NCBI GenBank assembly: GCA_037447605.1
Contig: CM074805.1
Coordinates: forward strand, 1,459,361 to 1,523,360
DNA length: 64,000 nt
Source: Zygnema circumcarinatum SAG 698-1b
Lineage: Eukaryota > Plantae > Zygnematophyceae
Direction of reading: 5' to 3'
Each line of letters begins with the position of its first letter. Positions within the stretch are counted from its first letter, which is position 1. Shown here piece by piece: positions 55,906-64,000 of this stretch. The position numbers and the translations under genes are program-made. The notes beneath the pieces were generated by a model that was given only the letters and a program-made list of their open reading frames with translations, made no database searches and was not told where the DNA came from.

Positions 55906-57011
55906 AACACGGGTTGATTGACAACAGCAGATGGCTTGCGTTGAGAATAGTGGGTGGCAGAGACACACACGGCCTGGAAGAAAAAAGCGAATCATTTACT
56001 CGCGGTGTAGGAAGCAGCGCCAAGACCTGCGCCTTAAGGCTGCTTAAGGCGGCCAGGGGGGGTGCTCTTAGTAGGCTCTATAACGAAAAAGCGCTCCGCC
56101 GTCCTCCGAGCAATGGTTGGAGAGAGGGGACGGTGAAGGCAGAAGGCGGCCCCTCCCCTCCCAGTGGGCCTGCCAGCCTGCCGCCAACACTGTCTTGCAG
56201 CTTCCGGTTAGAAGCGCTTGCTGTGGACGAGGAACTGAACCAGTTTGAGCGCGTTATCAGCGTGATGACGATCATCACTATTGTGATGATGATGATTATT
56301 ATTATTGTTTAATATCATCACTATAGTTATTAATAATGTTTTTTTTTATGTTTTGGTCAAGGAGGTATCGATTGGCTGTGCCTCCGCAAGGAAGCCAATT
56401 CTTGTATTCCCCACGTGTTCGAAATGAAGTATTCCGGACATTCTACTTGTAACTGAACCTGCCCATCGCCGCATGTGCCGTGGCTGAATTTTAAACTGTG
56501 CATTCAGATTCAGGCTTTGTTCCCTTGTACCAGTCGGCTAAGTTTGGGCTCCCCTTGCCGCCTGGGAGTCGCTCTGCGCTTGCAACTGGCGCTAGGAGCT
56601 GCACATCAAAACCGTCATATTTTAAAAGTCCGCCACGCCACTTGGGGAGTATGACGAATGAAGCACTCAGCCCCTGCTGGGTTAAAGGCCGTCAAGGAAC
56701 GGAATCTCAGTAAGGTTGATCTATGAAGGGCGGTCCGCAACACACTTCTCTTCACAATCAATGCCTGTTGTACGGCCACCTGATAACAGACACAGAGAAA
56801 TGAGGGCATTTGCCACCTGCTCGGTCATTTCCATATCGAATTGTAACCTACCCCACGGTGCTGAGTCTGATTGAACGAATCAAGTTCGAGGTTGAACGCA
56901 GGGAGGTTACATCCCATCCTGGAAACAGGAGAAGAGATTGCGCCTCCTCCAGCATGGCTGCTCATGTGATCTAGAACTCTACAAGAACCCTAATCCTAAC
57001 ATGACTTGCTT

Positions 57012-60000
57012 TCAAAATGGCGGCAAACTCCCTCGTGACTGCCGTGCCCTGCTTGAAACCTTCACAGCCGGAAACCCTGCAGCCTGAAGTCTCACTACAA
57101 GCTCATTCTGGAGAGGCTCCACAGTGCGGTTATCTCCAATAGGGACACACCAAAACACCATCCCTTGGAGCCGCGGTTCATCCTGGTACACCTGCACTCG
57201 TCGGCGAATGTTCGGCGCCTGAAACCCCACTCCAAAGCCCGGCGAAATAGAGGATTAAGTCAACATTTGGGGGTGGATACCCCGAAACTTGCAGCTCATT
57301 ACTTAATCACCCAACCCATTCTCGCAGGGCTTCATCCCCAGTGAATGCGACTCACAATTCCAACGTGGTACTGCCCGTTTTGAAGACGGACAATGTACAC
57401 ATGTGACACCTTTGCTGCTTCGGATGGAGGCAGCTCCCCGGCCTTTAAAACTGCGATTGAGACTTCGTGGCCTATCACAGCACTGCACGCCTCTGCAACC
57501 ATTGATTTTAAATCCGCCGCACGATCCCCAGGAGACGACTCCATGGAGGAATGCTGCCACAGACGGCCATTTGCCAATTGAGCTCCCTCCTTCGTTTCTC
57601 GTCCTTGCCCCCTTTTTGTCTTGATTCCTATCTCAGCGGGGTCGAATGAAGAAGTACTGTCATCTGGTAGTGCGTCAGATACTGTATGCTGCTGATCAAA
57701 TACTCTATGGTTATGTTCATGTCCATTTATTACCAAAGACTCTACGAAGCCTCCATCTGCAGAGCTCTCTAATCTGGTTGCTGCATCCTCCTCATCCCTC
57801 GTGTCTCCCTCGCCGCCGGTCACTGGAGTTTCTTCATGAATTGAAGGCCAACTTCTGTGCCTTGCAACATCCGGTAGTGCTGGCGTCATCCTGCCCTCTA
57901 CACCCGAGCCGTCCAAGGTTCCCCCTCTCCCATTCGTGGAAAGAGAAGTAGCCGTTGCTACCTCTCTCCCATTCCAGCATCCAGTCATATCATTCCCGTC
58001 ATTGACATGCCGAATAGGAGCTCCCCCCTTCCCTAGGGTAATTTCCAGCAGCTCTCTGTAAACCTCCTCTCCACGCTTGACAAGGCGTAGAGGCACCCCC
58101 TCCTTCAGAGCCACACTAAACGCCAAAGACTCCCTGCGAACAGGTCAATGCCACACATTTGATCACCTTCAATACACTTTATTCCAACTCGCTCTCTCGC
58201 AGCCCTTGAAGGGTACAAAATGCGAGAGTTTCCTCATCATCTAATCATAAAGTATAGAACTTTCGACCATCAACTGAGCCTACAGTGTCCAGTCTCCTAC
58301 TCACCTACACTCTCCATCGACAAGTGTCCACGTCGGCTCTGTCTGTCCATTCTTCACTATTGTTCCCATAGCCTTTCGAGCCACATTTCCCGCCTTGAGC
58401 TTTATATCAAGCAAGCCATGGAGGTGCGTGGAAATAATTCCAATGCAGGCGCGCGAGGCCAACTCTTCCAAAGACGCAGCGACGAGGCCCGTCCCTTTCC
58501 CAACCTCTGTCCCTTTGCAGAGCTCATCCACGAGGACAAGACTCCTCCCGCTTGCTTCTGCGAGGATGGTACTCAGCTCCGACATCTCCATCTGCACAGG
58601 CAGCATAGCAGAGCAGCCCACTCACATGAAGAGCCACGCTTAACACCAACACTAGGGGCATTTTGACGTCTGTTTTACTCGAGAATCAATAGTTGTGGCT
58701 TTTGATTGTTAGGGCGTTATTGTGACAGTTCTTGGATGGACTTTGGTGGAACTAACTCGTTAGACTCAGCAGGCAACAAACGCATGCATGCTTCATTCAA
58801 GGAACATGAGCGTCAACTGATTTAAAGATAGACACCAGGCTTGGAATGCTCGAAATGAAAAGGAGTCCCTGTACACATAACACATGACACATAACTGTAG
58901 CAGAACACAAGAATCGTTTGAAACGTTGTCCATTTCACAATCCAGAACCCCAATACAATATGTCACGCAGCTACAATTACGTGCAGCAACCTCGCCCCGG
59001 TCGGCTCCTTTATCCATTCACTTTCATTTGTTCTCCCCCCTTCTGTCCGGAACTTCAGACAGAACGTATCCTCATCTAGCCCTCCCACCTCACCTGAAAA
59101 GAACTCTTTCCGTCTGCTGGGCTATCCGCTGCCATCATTCGGAGAAAGAAGGCGTCAAAGCGTGGCAGCCTTGCCTCCTTGGCAGGAACACATAACCCAC
59201 AGTTGGCCAGAAGAGCTGCAGCATATACTGAACGCAGAATGCTCGACTTTCCACCCCCATTGGGACCAGTTAATAAACACATTGAGTTTAAACTGACGGA
59301 GTTTGCCACGACTTGAGACCCCGTAAGGTTAAGCCAATAGGGAACGAGTCCTTCCAGTTGCAGTTGGCGGAGTGGTCGATATTCATTTGAGTCAACCTTT
59401 CGAGCTGTGCTGCCTTCATCCATGAGTGTGGCACGGACCCATCCTCTCCGCTGTGTCTCTCTGTATACCCCCAAAACAAAAGAATTTTCCTTACACTCCC
59501 ATCAGGACGCTTGTGCCACTCTCAAATACTTTCAGTTCCAAAAGGACCCAGTGGACAGGGTTACATAGGAAGAGAGCCTGAGAATTAATCAGCTGATGAC
59601 GAGATGATGGAGCTACACCGCTACTACCGTGACGACTAACTGCGGTATCAAACCAAGGGTTGTCCTCCCTGTTTTCCAAACCTTTCCTCGCCAAGATCAA
59701 AGACTCACATCATTCGAGAAAAAAACTGAGGGCAGTACCATTCATGAAATGACATGTGTCTTATTTTTCTATTCCTTGACTCGATTCTCGACTTTTGTAC
59801 CATAAACCTGCATGGTAAACCTGGGGACTTCACTCACATGAATTTGCGGTGGACCGTTCAAGAACTAGCTTGAGAGCACCTCAATGTAGTATAGTTGGAG
59901 GTGCAAAGCAATGCATGTGATATTCGTATTGAAGGCCGACAGGGGAGAAGGTAAAACGAGGAATGCAAATCAGAAGGACAAAAAGTTTAATGGACTTACT

Positions 60001-63000
60001 CTGTATGCTGGATCAAGGTGCATGCGATCACAGAAAAATTTGCAGCTGTGATGATTGAATCCAATTTGTCCTCTAGCTCAGATGCAAGCTTCTTGAGCAC
60101 AGCAATCACTGCCTCACAGGCTGCCTCACAGGCCTCGCGATACCTGCAGGCAAAAGCAGAGTAAGGGCACGGACCCACCGTTGACAAGATATGCTGCAGA
60201 TAGTAGTGCCAAGAGGGGGCTATTGGGAGAAGAATTGTTGGCTTGATACAGAAGAGGTGTAAATCATGTCCAGTTCTATGATGCAACAAAACTTGGAACG
60301 CCAAGCAAACATTATCAGTTCCTTGTCCTTTGAACCCTCTCTAATGTGCAAAAAACGGCCTTCAATCTCTTCATAGTACACTCCTTGGGCTTCTGTTAGC
60401 ATCAGAGTCTCCTCTCTCCCACCAAACTCAAACGACCTCTGCCTCCATAGTAACTCTTACTTCAATTGTCAGTTCATAGTCATGAAGCCTCTAAGCTTCC
60501 CATCTCATGAACTGCTAATCCCGCCACACATGTCATCCCCTGGAAGCCACAACCCTCACCCCCTGGCATTTGTCGCCTCCCTGGAAACATCTCAAACCCT
60601 ATAATCCCCGAAGCCATACCATAGCCCGGAGGGTGAGGGCGGGGGGCGGGTTACCTGGTGAGGGCCTCATCTACCTCGGGGCAGGTCCACCAGTCCTCTC
60701 CCACTTTGCGGGGAGTTCGGTTGCCCCTCTCCAGAGCGTGTTCCAGCGCCGCTGCCTGCTTCACTCCCGGCTGTGCGCCAAGCCGCATTTCCTCGGCCTG
60801 CCGAGGGCAGAAACATGCTATTGGTGTATTGGTGCTATTGGTGCTTGAACGACCTTGTTATCAAGTCTAACGATGCAGATTTCTTAGCAGAGCTATTGAG
60901 ACCCCAAAGGAGATTAAGCGGCTGGGATGAGTAGCTAGTGTTGTTTATTTGGTCTGTGAAAGAAAACAAGTAAACTATTCATAGACGGAGTCCTGGTCAT
61001 CCGCGATCAATGAATTTCCAGAAAGCACACAGCCTCCATCTTTGAAGCACTGACAAAGCGAAAATGGAGAAAGAGGTCTAAGGAAAAAATGTTGAGGATT
61101 GTCGTTGTACCGTTGGGCGCAAGCTCTTTCCCTTGAGATAAACACCTCCTTGATCCTTGCTGTATAGAATTTCCACCTTTCTAGACCTCGCTCTTGGGCC
61201 CGATCGTATCCATTGAACAATAGGTATGAACCACTCCTCCACCTGACGATGAGCCACACTACATCCAATCCTTCAGAAAATGAAGTGGCGATTCGAGTTC
61301 TATTTTCTGAAAATACTGGCCCACTCCACTCGACTTTCCTGGACCAAGATGATGAAGCGCCATTTTTTTGTATAAATCCAGCAACTATATTATCCTATTG
61401 TCACTACTTTAACAAGGGAACATCTGCTCCCATAATTAACGAGCGGCTCTGCTTTCTCACCGCATCGTTAAGGTCAGTCGCCGCGCTCTGCACCCTTGCG
61501 TAAGCATCTTCCACGTGTTTCGACTTCACTCGTCCCCGCCAGCTCGCCTCCTCCTCCATATAAAATTCCTGAAGAGGCTCCACTCCATCCAAGCCCTTGC
61601 TGCACATGGAGGCCATGGAAAGGGGATGAAGGGGGGCCTCCTCCGCCAGAACGTCGGCAATGCTTGCAGCAACTGCAGCACAATCTGAAACCTGTACAAA
61701 GTATGAGATGGGTCAGCTTACTTACGTTGGAACTCTCTACATATTGCTATTTACAAACAATGGTTCAGAAAGGCTGATGCCAAAACTCGTCTGACGAAGT
61801 CAACGTTGAAACGTGCCATCCTATCCTCCAGTAGGGGATACAAGAAACACACACAAGCAGGTATACCAGCTTACCAGCTGCTTTTTGTCCATATGGATCC
61901 CTGATGACAGCCACGTGGGGAGGAGGAGGTGCTCTCCAATAGGTTCAAGGGCTTCAACTTCAAACATGTACACCAGGTTTTCCGCTATGAGCCGAATTTT
62001 GCGGAGTTCCACGTGGTTCACCTCTCCTGCTCGAAGTAATTTGACCAGCTTTGAAGCAGGTTCTGTGTGGAATTCGGGTAGGGAGTCATGTACTGTAGAA
62101 AGGAGCCGACAGGCCCCTGCGATGCCTCCAAGCACGAGGCTGTCTGTCAGCATTTGTTAATTGAGAAGAAAGCGCAAGGACGAGGGGAAGGGAATGTGAA
62201 AGGCAAAATTGGAACGACAGAACACCTGCCTACTGCTTTCGAGTTTCACCTTGAGGTCTAAGTTGTGTTACGTCGTCAAGTTTAATGTCAGCAATATTAG
62301 CACGTATGTTAAAGGGCAGGGCGGGAAGATAGTGCCTAGTCTATACATCCAAATTGTGTTGAGGTCATAAAAAATAAAAAATGGAAATGGGTGCTGTCCT
62401 CCACAATAAAATACGTGAAAGTCTCCTACCATTTCTACGTGTTTCTTAACAAGCAGACGTCAGCACATTCGTGGCAGAAGGAGAATATTCAAACGACTTG
62501 AACTCGAAGAATATCGTCTCATTCAGCTACCATAATGTCCGCCATGATTCCGGCTAGATTGAAGGTCTACAAGCAGCAACACAGCAGTAATCCTAACGCA
62601 TGCACCTTGGATGGCGTCTGCCACATTTGAAGGAGGAGGATTGAGGAGAAGCTCCCGGAGGTAAATCTGGCAGAGCTTGTTGGCCTCCGTGGGAAGCAGC
62701 ACTTGCAGAAGGCTCGGAACGCCAACAGTCGCCTGCAGACCTGAAATGGGTCCAGGTCGCCTCTGCGGCGACAAGAGCTAATCAATGGACTGTACAAGCT
62801 AGCAGCAAAATATGGATATAGGGATTCCGTTCAACAGAAAGAAAGTAAGATCCCCTGAGGAAAGAAATAGCTCAGTCACAGGGCTTAAGGATAGAGGAGA
62901 CCTGCACTTCAGTGGGAGTGGCCAATGCACCCACGCACATACATTTTGTGTGATTCGACTTCGATTTGCATTGTCACGCATGTCCCGGAGGTCAAAAAGC

Positions 63001-64000
63001 AGAGGGCTTTACTGGCCTAAAGACTTGCAAGACAGAATGAAGCCTGCACACACTACTCGATTACTGCCAAAATATGGCAGTTGACAAAGACAGATGGTTC
63101 AAAGTTTAGAGTCGAATGGTCTGTGCAGAGAAAGTTGGGGGAGAAGAGCGCTCACCAATCTGCGAAGCTGCAGAAGTGTAAAGTGGGCGAGGCCTATTCC
63201 CTGGGGGCGATTCCATTTCGCGAAAAACTACATCTTCATCCAAAGCGTAGTGCTGTCTGACCTGCACCGCAGAGGCAGATCCGAAGCAGCGAGCACTTGA
63301 ATACTCTGCAGCTTTATAATCTCGCTAACGGGGGGGGTGAGCTGCAGCTGCGGTTCCGTTTAGGCATAATCTACGGCACTTCTTTACCTGCTCTTAGAGC
63401 AAGGCCGTACGAATGATACGAAAGAGGCGAGCTCCAATCCTCCAGGTTTAAGAGTGCATATGCTTCCACTCTTAAAGCTCAGAGGTGATATGCGGACGGG
63501 CTACAAACCATGCAAACATGGCATTGACATTCATCGTAAAATAGAAGTGACATTCCGTTTCAGGAAACAGGAGGTCGTACCTTTTGCAAGAGGCCGTGCA
63601 GAGAATCGCCGAAATACTCGTCGTATTGGCGGCTCATGCATTCGCTCTGAAGCCGACCACCCCATTTATACACACCTGAGGGCCACATTCAGCGAACAGG
63701 CAAAAATCATCAATTGTGCTGCCTCACAACACAGATAAAAGCTGCACCTATCAGCCTTTCATAGTCGGCAAGAAGAATGAACTAAGGACTGCTTTAATAA
63801 GCCATTCAAATAGCAGACAGCGTCATTGTCAGCAAAATTGTTCACAGTAACCACGTTTCAGCAGGCAGATACAGAGAATCCAACGATAACATCAATAAGA
63901 AGGTCCACAAATACGACATCTTGTCTCACCAGTGACATCAATCTTGAGAGATTCGTGAAGAAAGCCTCCGGCGGTATCAATGCTTCTCATCTTTGCCAGA
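57012..64000 (-). CDS. MSH1: MutS homolog 1 (organellar MSH1), 5' part outside the window; C-terminal GIY-YIG-like domain degenerate
   Basis: MSH1-specific blocks: NRPRPLY...QIG, GVPSLLQVLLP, YLRELLLNPP, SKLVKLL...NHVE, SWRGRVK, GLVPYW, LLTGPNGGGKSSILRS, DSPADGKSSFQ, DELCKGTE, IISTHLH, GEC|RESLAF. Last two exons encode VYIVRLQNGQYHVGI|APNIRRRV... Confidence 0.93.

What the first reader, a model, noticed from the sequence alone, without database searches (positions are those of the whole stretch)
57012..57400. MSH1 with an apparently nuclease-dead GIY-YIG domain
Seen in sequence: the spliced C-terminus is HVYIVRLQNGQYHVGIAPNIRRRVQVYQDEPRLQGMVFWCVPIGDNRTVEPLQNELVVRLQAAGFPAVK. Aligned to the angiosperm MSH1 pattern as recalled (VY.....LYIG.TD.L.GR..AH...LE..LI.QL...G..L.N), the YIG Tyr is His, the His after the catalytic Arg is Tyr, the metal-binding Glu is Gln, and the terminal Asn is Lys. 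The ATPase motifs (GPNGGGKS, DE, STH) are intact. Inference: a mismatch-sensing or ATPase-active but non-cutting MSH1 variant or paralogue. A moss MSH1 copy lacking the nuclease domain has been reported (from memory), so this may be an independent or intermediate case.
Basis: partly seen in the sequence, partly recalled or inferred. Interest (0 to 1): 0.75.

Follow-up and report, generated by a model that had tools for sequence, protein, structure and literature searches.

The report
Algal MSH1 with decayed nuclease domain
A streptophyte alga expresses an otherwise normal organelle DNA-repair gene (plant-type MSH1) whose built-in DNA-cutting domain keeps its shape-forming residues but has lost most of its catalytic ones, so it probably senses DNA faults without cutting.

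Summary
The minus-strand gene is a plant-type MSH1. Its last intron (57219-57355, GT..AG) is spliced exactly as proposed in transcript contigs of four public runs from three studies.

An MSH1-specific profile of the GIY-YIG domain matches only these two exons in the whole window, collinearly and weakly: 13.6 + 12.8 bits, against 57-120 bits in 179 homologues.

At columns that are nearly invariant in those 179 proteins, the window differs:
- YIG Tyr is His.
- Thr/Ser-Asp is Ala-Pro.
- His-Arg is Tyr-Gln.
- Lys-Ser is Asn-Arg.
- The metal-binding Glu is Gln.
- Asn/Ser is Lys.
- Asp is Ser.

The GIY Tyr, the Gly and the Arg are kept. Tyr for His is tolerated in the wider superfamily (RxxxH/Y). 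Glu-to-Ala kills cleavage in Arabidopsis MSH1.

The decay is confined to this domain. The core and ATPase parts diverge at the normal rate, hydrophobic core positions are kept (16 of 21), and the C-terminal Gly-Ser-x-Pro-Pro-Phe tail is kept.

The case is independent of the truncated moss MSH1L. I could not test for a second, canonical copy elsewhere in the genome. I found no published description. Best reading: an expressed MSH1 with a pseudo-nuclease domain.

The parts
57015..57218 (-). Last coding exon (68 aa). It holds the second and larger part of the GIY-YIG-like domain: RVQVY (Arg kept, His replaced by Tyr), Gln at 57110-57108 in place of the metal-binding Glu, Lys at 57062-57060 in place of Asn/Ser, Ser at 57053-57051 in place of Asp, and the conserved tail GSLPPF at 57032-57015.
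   Evidence: Translation. Profile positions 32-93, 12.8 bits. MAFFT alignment A1. RNA contigs.
57012..57014 (-). Stop codon
57219..57355 (-). Last intron, 137 nt, GT..AG, phase 0. It lies one residue after the YIG Gly, the same place as in land-plant MSH1.
   Evidence: The joint is present in 4 runs from 3 studies. GT/AG ends checked. Land-plant gene fragments that read through the intron after YVGQ: P0006, P0007, P0009, P0012.
57356..57406 (-). First part of the GIY-YIG-like domain at the end of exon 8: S-H-V-Y (GIY Tyr kept) and Y-H-V-G-I (YIG Tyr replaced by His at 57367-57365, Gly kept).
   Evidence: Profile positions 2-29, 13.6 bits; coordinates.
57356..58133 (-). Exon 8. It holds the end of MutS domain V (ESLAF.., from 58132), a linker of about 190 aa with no similarity to the homologues compared, the ELPPSE motif (57436-57419), and the first half of the GIY-YIG-like domain.
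58305..58591 (-). ATPase exon with Walker B (VLVDELCKGTE, 58537-58505) and STHLHG (58432-58415).
   Evidence: Pfam MutS_V 1.5e-13. 53-65% identity to streptophyte MSH1.
59094..59460 (-). ATPase exon with Walker A (GPNGGGKS, 59267-59244) and the DGKSSFQ signature.
   Evidence: Pfam MutS_V 6e-14.
60000..62118 (-). Five further RNA-confirmed core exons: 60000-60143, 60655-60797, 61111-61242, 61461-61691 and 61875-62118.
   Evidence: Joints, refined to GT..AG; homology.
62560..63679 (-). Upstream MSH1 exons located only by tblastn (about 62580-62765, 63154-63267, 63578-63679). The 5' end of the gene, including MutS domain I, very probably lies beyond base 64000.
   Evidence: tblastn. The X1 transcript contig has 1574 nt 5' of base 62118.
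56600..57011 (-). 3' UTR of at least 412 nt. The contigs run on past 56600.
   Evidence: table 8

Best explanation
This is the expressed MSH1 orthologue of a streptophyte alga. MSH1 is the organelle-targeted MutS homologue that normally carries its own GIY-YIG nuclease.

Shown: the MutS core and the ABC ATPase are conserved at the usual rate. [quoted passage not shown] It has lost the metal-binding Glu (now Gln), the YIG Tyr (now His), and most of the other polar residues that are invariant in MSH1.

Inferred: the domain still folds but cannot cleave DNA. It probably serves as a DNA-binding or docking module; its net charge is +6 and the Arabidopsis domain binds branched DNA. The protein would then act as an ATP-driven sensor or clamp on mismatched or branched organelle DNA, without making the mismatch-directed double-strand break described for Arabidopsis. 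Any cutting would be left to another enzyme.
For: Expression and gene structure:
- The splice is confirmed in transcript contigs.
- The intron position is shared with land plants.

The domain is a weak but real homologue:
- Only these two exons in the window match the MSH1 GIY-YIG profile. They match collinearly, at 26 bits in total against 57-120 bits (median 107) in 179 homologues.

Catalytic and signature residues are lost (census):
- Glu 178/179, window Gln.
- YIG Tyr 178/179, window His.
- Thr/Ser 179/179, window Ala.
- Asp32 170/179, window Pro.
- Arg42 171/179, window Gln.
- Lys-Ser 160 and 166 of 179, window Asn-Arg.
- Asp88 178/179, window Ser.
- Asn/Ser 171/179, window Lys.
- AtMsh1 Glu1078Ala does not cleave.

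The decay is confined to the domain:
- The ratio of domain identity to core identity is 0.39-0.79 for all 27 window pairs. It is 0.82-1.46 for 351 other pairs.
- In a tree of the core and ATPase columns, the window has one of the shortest root-to-tip paths.

The fold appears to be retained:
- 16 of 21 conserved hydrophobic columns hold an allowed residue, against 4.8 expected by composition (p = 3e-7). That is within the family range (minimum 15).
- Only 8 of 19 polar or catalytic columns do, below every homologue (minimum 12).
- The tail GSLPPF matches Closterium GSVPPF and Marchantia GTGPPF.
- Codon-position GC is exon-like.
Against: - There is no biochemical test.
- No close relative was found (nothing above about 62% identity), so purifying selection on the domain could not be measured with dN/dS.
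- A Glu lies two residues after the Gln, and a His replaces the Tyr, so altered chemistry is not formally excluded.
- A 68-codon open frame has about a 6% chance of staying open without selection.
- The contrast between hydrophobic and polar columns is only borderline (Fisher p = 0.05).
- The joined domain could not be folded. The half-domain model gave no structural match.
- The rest of the genome could not be searched for a canonical second copy.
Confidence: 0.6

Rival explanations
1. The gene is a sub- or neo-functionalised paralogue. A second MSH1 with a canonical nuclease elsewhere in the genome does the cutting, and this copy plays a side role, as moss MSH1L/MSH1A does.
For: Mosses keep a nuclease-less MSH1 copy beside a canonical one, and Spirogloea has three copies (PMC10487979). 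The sister lineage's transcriptome holds two MSH1 forms, P0155 (canonical) and P0015 (YIG Gly replaced by Asp).
Against: MSH1 is single-copy in most green plants. The core and ATPase parts of this gene are not accelerated, as an orthologue under full constraint would show. It is well expressed in all four runs. The window holds no second copy.
Confidence: 0.2
2. The domain is a neutral relic. Nuclease function was lost and the tail is simply decaying, with no retained role.
For: Identity to homologues in the last exon is only 15-24%. Eleven of 19 conserved polar columns are lost. An open frame of this length survives by chance about 6% of the time. The half-domain model found no structural match.
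Against: The alignment is ungapped over 85 residues to the very C-terminus. The hydrophobic core is kept far above chance (p = 3e-7). The G-S-x-P-P-F tail and the PP motif are kept. The intron is spliced correctly. The moss lineage shows that truncation is what happens when the domain is dispensable.
Confidence: 0.12
3. The domain is still an active nuclease with re-wired chemistry: His in place of the YIG Tyr, RxxxY as in UvrC, and the Glu two residues downstream or the Gln holding the metal.
For: RxxxY is a functional variant in the superfamily. The GIY Tyr, Gly and Arg are kept. An unrelated chlorophyte-like MSH1 (P0094) shows the same His-to-Tyr plus Glu-to-Gln pair, which could hint at a coordinated change.
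Against: The four hydrophobic positions and Gly-Phe around the Glu column align without any register shift. The downstream Glu would therefore face away on the helix. Seven further signature residues are also gone, unlike in P0094. Loss of this Glu abolishes cleavage in AtMsh1.
Confidence: 0.08

Closest known systems
Arabidopsis MSH1 (AtMsh1, AT3G24320), a mismatch-directed GIY-YIG nuclease of plant organelles
   Same: [quoted passage not shown] The intron after the YIG motif is shared. Core and ATPase identity is 42% to the crucifer (Hirschfeldia) MSH1 used as its stand-in in the panel.
   Different: The catalytic triad Arg1048, His1052, Glu1078 reads Arg, Tyr, Gln here. The YIG Tyr and seven other MSH1-invariant polar residues are replaced. 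Identity in the domain is only about 16%.
AtMsh1 Glu1078Ala, an engineered nuclease-dead mutant (bioRxiv 10.64898/2026.06.11.731605)
   Same: The same Glu column is lost, so the expected behaviour is the same: binds DNA but does not cut.
   Different: This is a natural allele. It carries many additional substitutions that have accumulated over evolutionary time.
Moss MSH1L / Physcomitrium MSH1A (PMC10487979; PMC7076466)
   Same: An MSH1-type protein without a working nuclease.
   Different: The moss proteins are truncated soon after the ATPase domain. They arose by a moss-specific partial duplication beside a canonical MSH1. The window gene keeps a full-length degenerate domain and groups with a streptophyte-alga transcript.
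P0094, a chlorophyte-like MSH1 fragment from a public run (Logan contig)
   Same: It is the only other protein of the 179 with Gln in the Glu column and Tyr in the His column.
   Different: It keeps the YIG Tyr, Ser-Asp, Lys-Ser, Asp88 and Phe-Gly, and it is unrelated in the tree sense. It is an independent event.
GIY-YIG nucleases UvrC and I-TevI
   Same: Same predicted order of helices in the part that could be folded. The RxxxY form of the Arg motif is as in UvrC.
   Different: Those enzymes have the second Tyr, the Glu and the Asn. The window lacks all three.

Membership tests
Plant-type MSH1 (MutS homologue 1 with C-terminal GIY-YIG) | MutS domain V ABC ATPase with Walker A, Walker B and the STH loop | tested here: met
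   Pfam MutS_V matches at 6e-14 and 1.5e-13 on the two exons. Motifs located.
Plant-type MSH1 (MutS homologue 1 with C-terminal GIY-YIG) | Falls inside the MSH1 clade in a tree | tested here: met
   Maximum-likelihood tree on 465 core and ATPase columns. The window is sister to a streptophyte transcript (P0155) with UFBoot 98, inside streptophyte MSH1.
Plant-type MSH1 (MutS homologue 1 with C-terminal GIY-YIG) | C-terminal domain homologous to the MSH1 GIY-YIG domain | tested here: met
   Collinear profile hits on both exons (E 0.003 and 0.011 within the window). Ungapped alignment to the PPF terminus. Shared intron position.
Plant-type MSH1 (MutS homologue 1 with C-terminal GIY-YIG) | [quoted passage not shown] | not testable with these tools
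   The 5' part of the gene lies beyond base 64000.
Catalytically active GIY-YIG nuclease | GIY Tyr | tested here: met
   Tyr in HVY; 179/179 homologues.
Catalytically active GIY-YIG nuclease | YIG Tyr | tested here: not met
   His at 57367-57365; Tyr in 178/179 homologues.
Catalytically active GIY-YIG nuclease | Arg-x-x-x-His/Tyr motif | tested here: met
   RVQVY at 57200-57186. Tyr is allowed in the superfamily but is seen in only 1 of 179 MSH1 proteins.
Catalytically active GIY-YIG nuclease | Metal-binding Glu | tested here: not met
   Gln at 57110-57108; Glu in 178/179 homologues. The register is fixed by four hydrophobic columns and Gly-Phe.
Catalytically active GIY-YIG nuclease | Conserved Asn (Asn or Ser in MSH1) after the Glu helix | tested here: not met
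   Lys at 57062-57060; Asn or Ser in 171/179 homologues and Lys never.
Catalytically active GIY-YIG nuclease | Match to Pfam PF01541 | tested here: inconclusive
   No hit on either exon alone. Canonical MSH1 domains reach only 18-30 bits, against a cut-off of 22.6. The joined domain was not submitted.
Moss MSH1L / MSH1A type | Truncated after the ATPase domain; member of the moss-specific duplicate clade | tested here: not met
   A full-length domain is present. The moss-like proteins P0165 and P0166 group with Ceratodon MSH1, away from the window.

The most novel reading that the evidence does not exclude
This alga's only MSH1 cannot cut. Earlier notes on the same genome say that its DPD1-MutS1 fusion has also lost its mismatch-binding residues. 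Together these would mean a close algal relative of land plants maintains its plastid and mitochondrial genomes without the mismatch-triggered break-and-recombine pathway thought to explain the very low organelle mutation rates of plants. The alga would then be a natural separation-of-function test of that model.
Probability: 0.25. Interest if true: 0.8.

Novelty: new variant of a known kind. Interest (0 to 1): 0.55.

Why it matters
MSH1 is held to keep plant organelle mutation rates very low by recognising a mismatch and cutting nearby with its own GIY-YIG domain. A 2026 preprint shows this cleavage and shows that it depends on the Glu that is missing here. Surveys state that all green-plant MSH1 proteins carry the domain and that its catalytic motifs are conserved.

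A naturally nuclease-deficient but otherwise well-conserved and expressed MSH1 would separate the sensing and ATPase role from the cutting role without any engineering. It predicts measurable consequences in this alga: a higher organelle substitution rate, or more repeat-mediated rearrangement. It also points to a non-catalytic role for the domain and its conserved C-terminal tail.

Tried and rejected
Searches that gave nothing useful:
- Pfam on the separate exons gave no GIY-YIG hit. This is uninformative, because canonical MSH1 domains are themselves marginal for PF01541.
- A PDB sequence search with the last exon returned only chance matches to designed HEAT-type repeats that share IGD.R.VEPL.
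- A word-index search with exon 8 found nothing in its allowed length range.
- Searches for a close relative or for the alga's own annotated protein all failed. Nothing exceeded about 62% identity, so no dN/dS could be computed and no stored full-length protein was available.
- The ESM Atlas search on the last exon gave only sub-threshold leads to Eco29kI and GIY-YIG clusters (0.87).

Structure:
- AlphaFold on the last exon with a homologue alignment gave pLDDT 83 and helices where the family has them. The alignment largely drives this result.
- The half-domain model found no significant structural match (Foldseek E > 6; best VIA Z 3.3).

Step left out:
- The spliced (joined) domain or protein was not sent to any search or folding tool. 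Exons were handled one by one, by reference.
- In local scripts only, the exon translations were placed as separate rows in alignments. Their columns were pooled for identity counts and for the tree.

Readings rejected:
- An alternative canonical last exon in the window: none of the 2546 six-frame fragments fits.
- A register shift that would put the nearby Glu in the catalytic column.
- Kinship with moss MSH1L.

Organism:
- The organism is coded. Earlier notes call it a streptophyte alga. A Zygnema identity is only a guess, based on the MutS1 remark in PMC12292046.
Full report
**What is there.** The finding lies at the 3' end of an intron-rich gene on the minus strand.
- Exon 8 ends ..S-H-V-Y-I-V-R-L-Q-N-G-Q-Y-H-V-G-I at base 57356.
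- A 137-nt GT..AG phase-0 intron occupies 57355-57219.
- The last exon, 57218-57015, encodes 68 residues and is followed by a stop codon at 57014-57012.
Everything else matches.

**Expression and splicing.**
- Seven public runs of the same coded organism hold 70-83% of the sampled words of 56600-59600.
- I laid four of them, from three studies, on 56600-62499. Their contigs match with no differences and skip eight GT..AG introns, so they are transcript assemblies.
- All four join 57356 to 57218.
- The refined introns are 57219-57355, 58134-58304, 58592-59093, 59461-59999, 60144-60654, 60798-61110, 61243-61460 and 61692-61874.
- One contig is 4421 nt long and has 1574 nt 5' of base 62118. The 5' part of the gene, including MutS domain I, therefore almost certainly lies beyond base 64000.
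- No alternative last exon appears in the contigs, but contigs drop rare isoforms.

**Family.**
- Pfam finds MutS domain V in exons 59094-59460 and 58305-58591 (6e-14 and 1.5e-13).
- Walker A, Walker B and the STH loop are intact.
- An exhaustive search with the second ATPase exon returned plant and algal MSH1 proteins at up to 62% identity. Named members include Psilotum, Ceratopteris, Adiantum, Closterium and Cymbomonas MSH1.
- A second search centred on the closest long protein added about 120 named land-plant MSH1 proteins.

**The nuclease domain.**
- I built an MSH1-specific profile of the GIY-YIG domain from 51 homologues and scanned all 2546 six-frame fragments of the window.
- Only the two RNA-confirmed exons hit, at consecutive profile positions (2-29 and 32-93). 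Their scores are 13.6 and 12.8 bits.
- The 179 homologues with a near-complete domain score 57-120 bits, median 107.
- The window therefore holds no other, canonical exon.
- MAFFT gives the same ungapped alignment from V-Y to the C-terminal P-P-F.

**Column census in the 179 homologues, with the window residue**.

| Column | Homologues | Window |
|---|---|---|
| GIY Tyr | 179/179 | Tyr |
| YIG Tyr | 178 | His |
| Gly | 177 | Gly |
| Thr/Ser | 179 | Ala |
| Asp32 | 170 | Pro |
| Arg | 179 | Arg |
| His | 178, one Tyr | Tyr |
| Arg after His | 171 | Gln |
| Lys | 160 | Asn |
| Ser | 166 | Arg |
| Glu | 178, one Gln | Gln |
| Asn/Ser | 171 | Lys |
| Asp88 | 178 | Ser |

- The Glu column cannot be rescued by a register shift. 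Four hydrophobic columns and Gly-Phe fix the alignment, so the Glu two residues downstream would point the other way on the helix.

**What the literature says about these residues.**
- A 2026 preprint (bioRxiv 10.64898/2026.06.11.731605) shows that full-length Arabidopsis MSH1 makes mismatch-directed double-strand cuts.
- It names Arg1048, His1052 and Glu1078 as the catalytic triad and writes the motif as RxxxH/Y.
- It finds that Glu1078Ala does not cut with Mg or Mn.
The loss of the Glu and of the second Tyr is.

**Is the change confined to the domain?** Yes.
- Exon by exon, the window is as similar to streptophyte MSH1 proteins as they are to each other in the ATPase exons: median 56-57% against 56-62%. 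It is slightly less similar in the core exons.
- In the last exon it drops to 19%, against 50% among the others.
- The ratio of domain identity to core identity is 0.82-1.46 (median 1.10) for 351 pairs of other MSH1 proteins. It is 0.39-0.79 for all 27 pairs that involve the window.
- In a maximum-likelihood tree of 465 core and ATPase columns, the window is sister (UFBoot 98) to a streptophyte transcript from EukProt (P0155/P0015). It has one of the shortest root-to-tip distances.
- P0155 has all the canonical catalytic residues, so the loss is younger than that split.
- That sister's domain also scores low (57-78 bits), which hints at earlier relaxation in this clade.

**Relic or retained module?**
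- Of 21 conserved hydrophobic columns, the window holds an allowed residue at 16. Composition predicts 4.8 (p = 3e-7), and the family minimum is 15.
- Of 19 conserved polar, Gly or catalytic columns, it holds an allowed residue at only 8. The family minimum is 12.
- The contrast between the two classes is borderline (Fisher p = 0.05).
- The extreme C-terminus reads G-S-L-P-P-F. Closterium has G-S-V-P-P-F and Marchantia has G-T-G-P-P-F.
- The E-L-P-P-S motif before the domain is kept.
- The intron sits where land-plant gene fragments read through after Y-V-G-Q.
- The exon has exon-like codon-position GC.
- The domain has a net charge of +6, against a family median of +3.
- A 68-codon frame would stay open by chance about 6% of the time.
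- Taken together, I read this as a folded, non-catalytic domain. Without a close relative I could not measure selection directly.

**Relation to the moss case.**
- Mosses carry MSH1 plus MSH1L (MSH1A in Physcomitrium), which lacks the domain (PMC10487979, PMC7076466).
- The moss-like proteins in my set, P0165 and P0166, end about 70 residues after the ATPase domain. They are sister to Ceratodon MSH1.
- The window gene is a separate event of a different kind: decay in place, not truncation after duplication.

**What I could not settle.**
- Whether the genome holds a second, canonical MSH1. Earlier notes of this scan mention none, but that is weak evidence.
- Whether mismatch recognition is intact, because domain I is outside the window.
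- The fold of the joined domain.
  - The last exon alone folds with pLDDT 83, with helices where the family has them.
  - That half-domain finds no structural match.

**Context and novelty.**
- Earlier notes on the same genome call it a streptophyte alga with zygnematophyte affinities. They report a DPD1-MutS1 fusion whose MutS part looks de-functionalised. I did not test either claim.
- PMC12292046 reports loss of the mismatch motif in MutS1 of Zygnema circumcarinatum. This is compatible with these notes, but it does not identify the organism.
- Bai and Guo's survey states that all green-plant MSH1 proteins have the GIY-YIG domain, and the streptophyte algae found in its supplementary tables did not include Zygnema.
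- The 2026 preprint states that the catalytic motifs are conserved in Msh1 proteins.
- I found no description of an MSH1 with a degenerate nuclease domain.

**Verdict.**
- The 'nuclease-dead' reading is well supported by comparative evidence, after correcting the role of His-to-Tyr. It remains untested biochemically.
- The paralogue question is open.
- I class this as a new variant of a known kind, of moderate to good interest to people who work on organelle genome maintenance.

Noticed in passing
P0094 (Logan contig protein, 618 aa), residues 416-518: A chlorophyte-like MSH1 fragment with intact ATPase motifs. It is the only other protein of the 179 with Gln in the catalytic Glu column and Tyr in the His column, and it keeps all the other signature residues. 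This is an independent second case of the same pair of changes.
   Followed up: partly
P0015 / P0154 versus P0155 (EukProt Trinity DN733 isoforms), C-termini: The window's sister lineage has two MSH1 forms that differ in the nuclease domain. One is canonical. The other has the YIG Gly replaced by Asp (F-Y-V-D-K-T-D-D). Their domain scores (57-78 bits) are the lowest among the canonical set.
   Followed up: partly
window 57015-57032 (-); also Closterium P0020 and Marchantia P0162 C-termini: The extreme C-terminal G-[ST]-x-P-P-F tail is conserved from Closterium and liverworts to this alga, even though the catalytic residues are gone here. Its function is unknown to me; it may be a docking motif.
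   Followed up: no
window about 57470-58030 (-), inside exon 8: A linker of about 190 residues, rich in Gly, Asp, Glu, Ser and Thr, lies between the ATPase domain and the nuclease-like domain. It has no similarity to the homologues compared.
   Followed up: no
window 58565-59123 and 59687-60029: Low-depth contigs (depth 2-10, against 20-160 for the spliced contigs) cover parts of two introns in several runs. They are probably unspliced pre-mRNA or a trace of genomic DNA.
   Followed up: no
window 57126-57155 (-), I-G-D-N-R-T-V-E-P-L: This stretch gives spurious PDB sequence hits to designed AlphaRep/HEAT repeat proteins that carry I-G-D-E-R-A-V-E-P-L. I judged this a chance match amplified by the repeats.
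   Followed up: yes
other pieces of the same genome (earlier notes s1-404109, s1-404140, s1-337100): Earlier notes report a DPD1-MutS1 fusion whose MutS part looks de-functionalised, and a GIY-YIG-like domain fused to plastid NFU1. Either could bear on how this alga handles organelle DNA if its MSH1 cannot cut.
   Followed up: no
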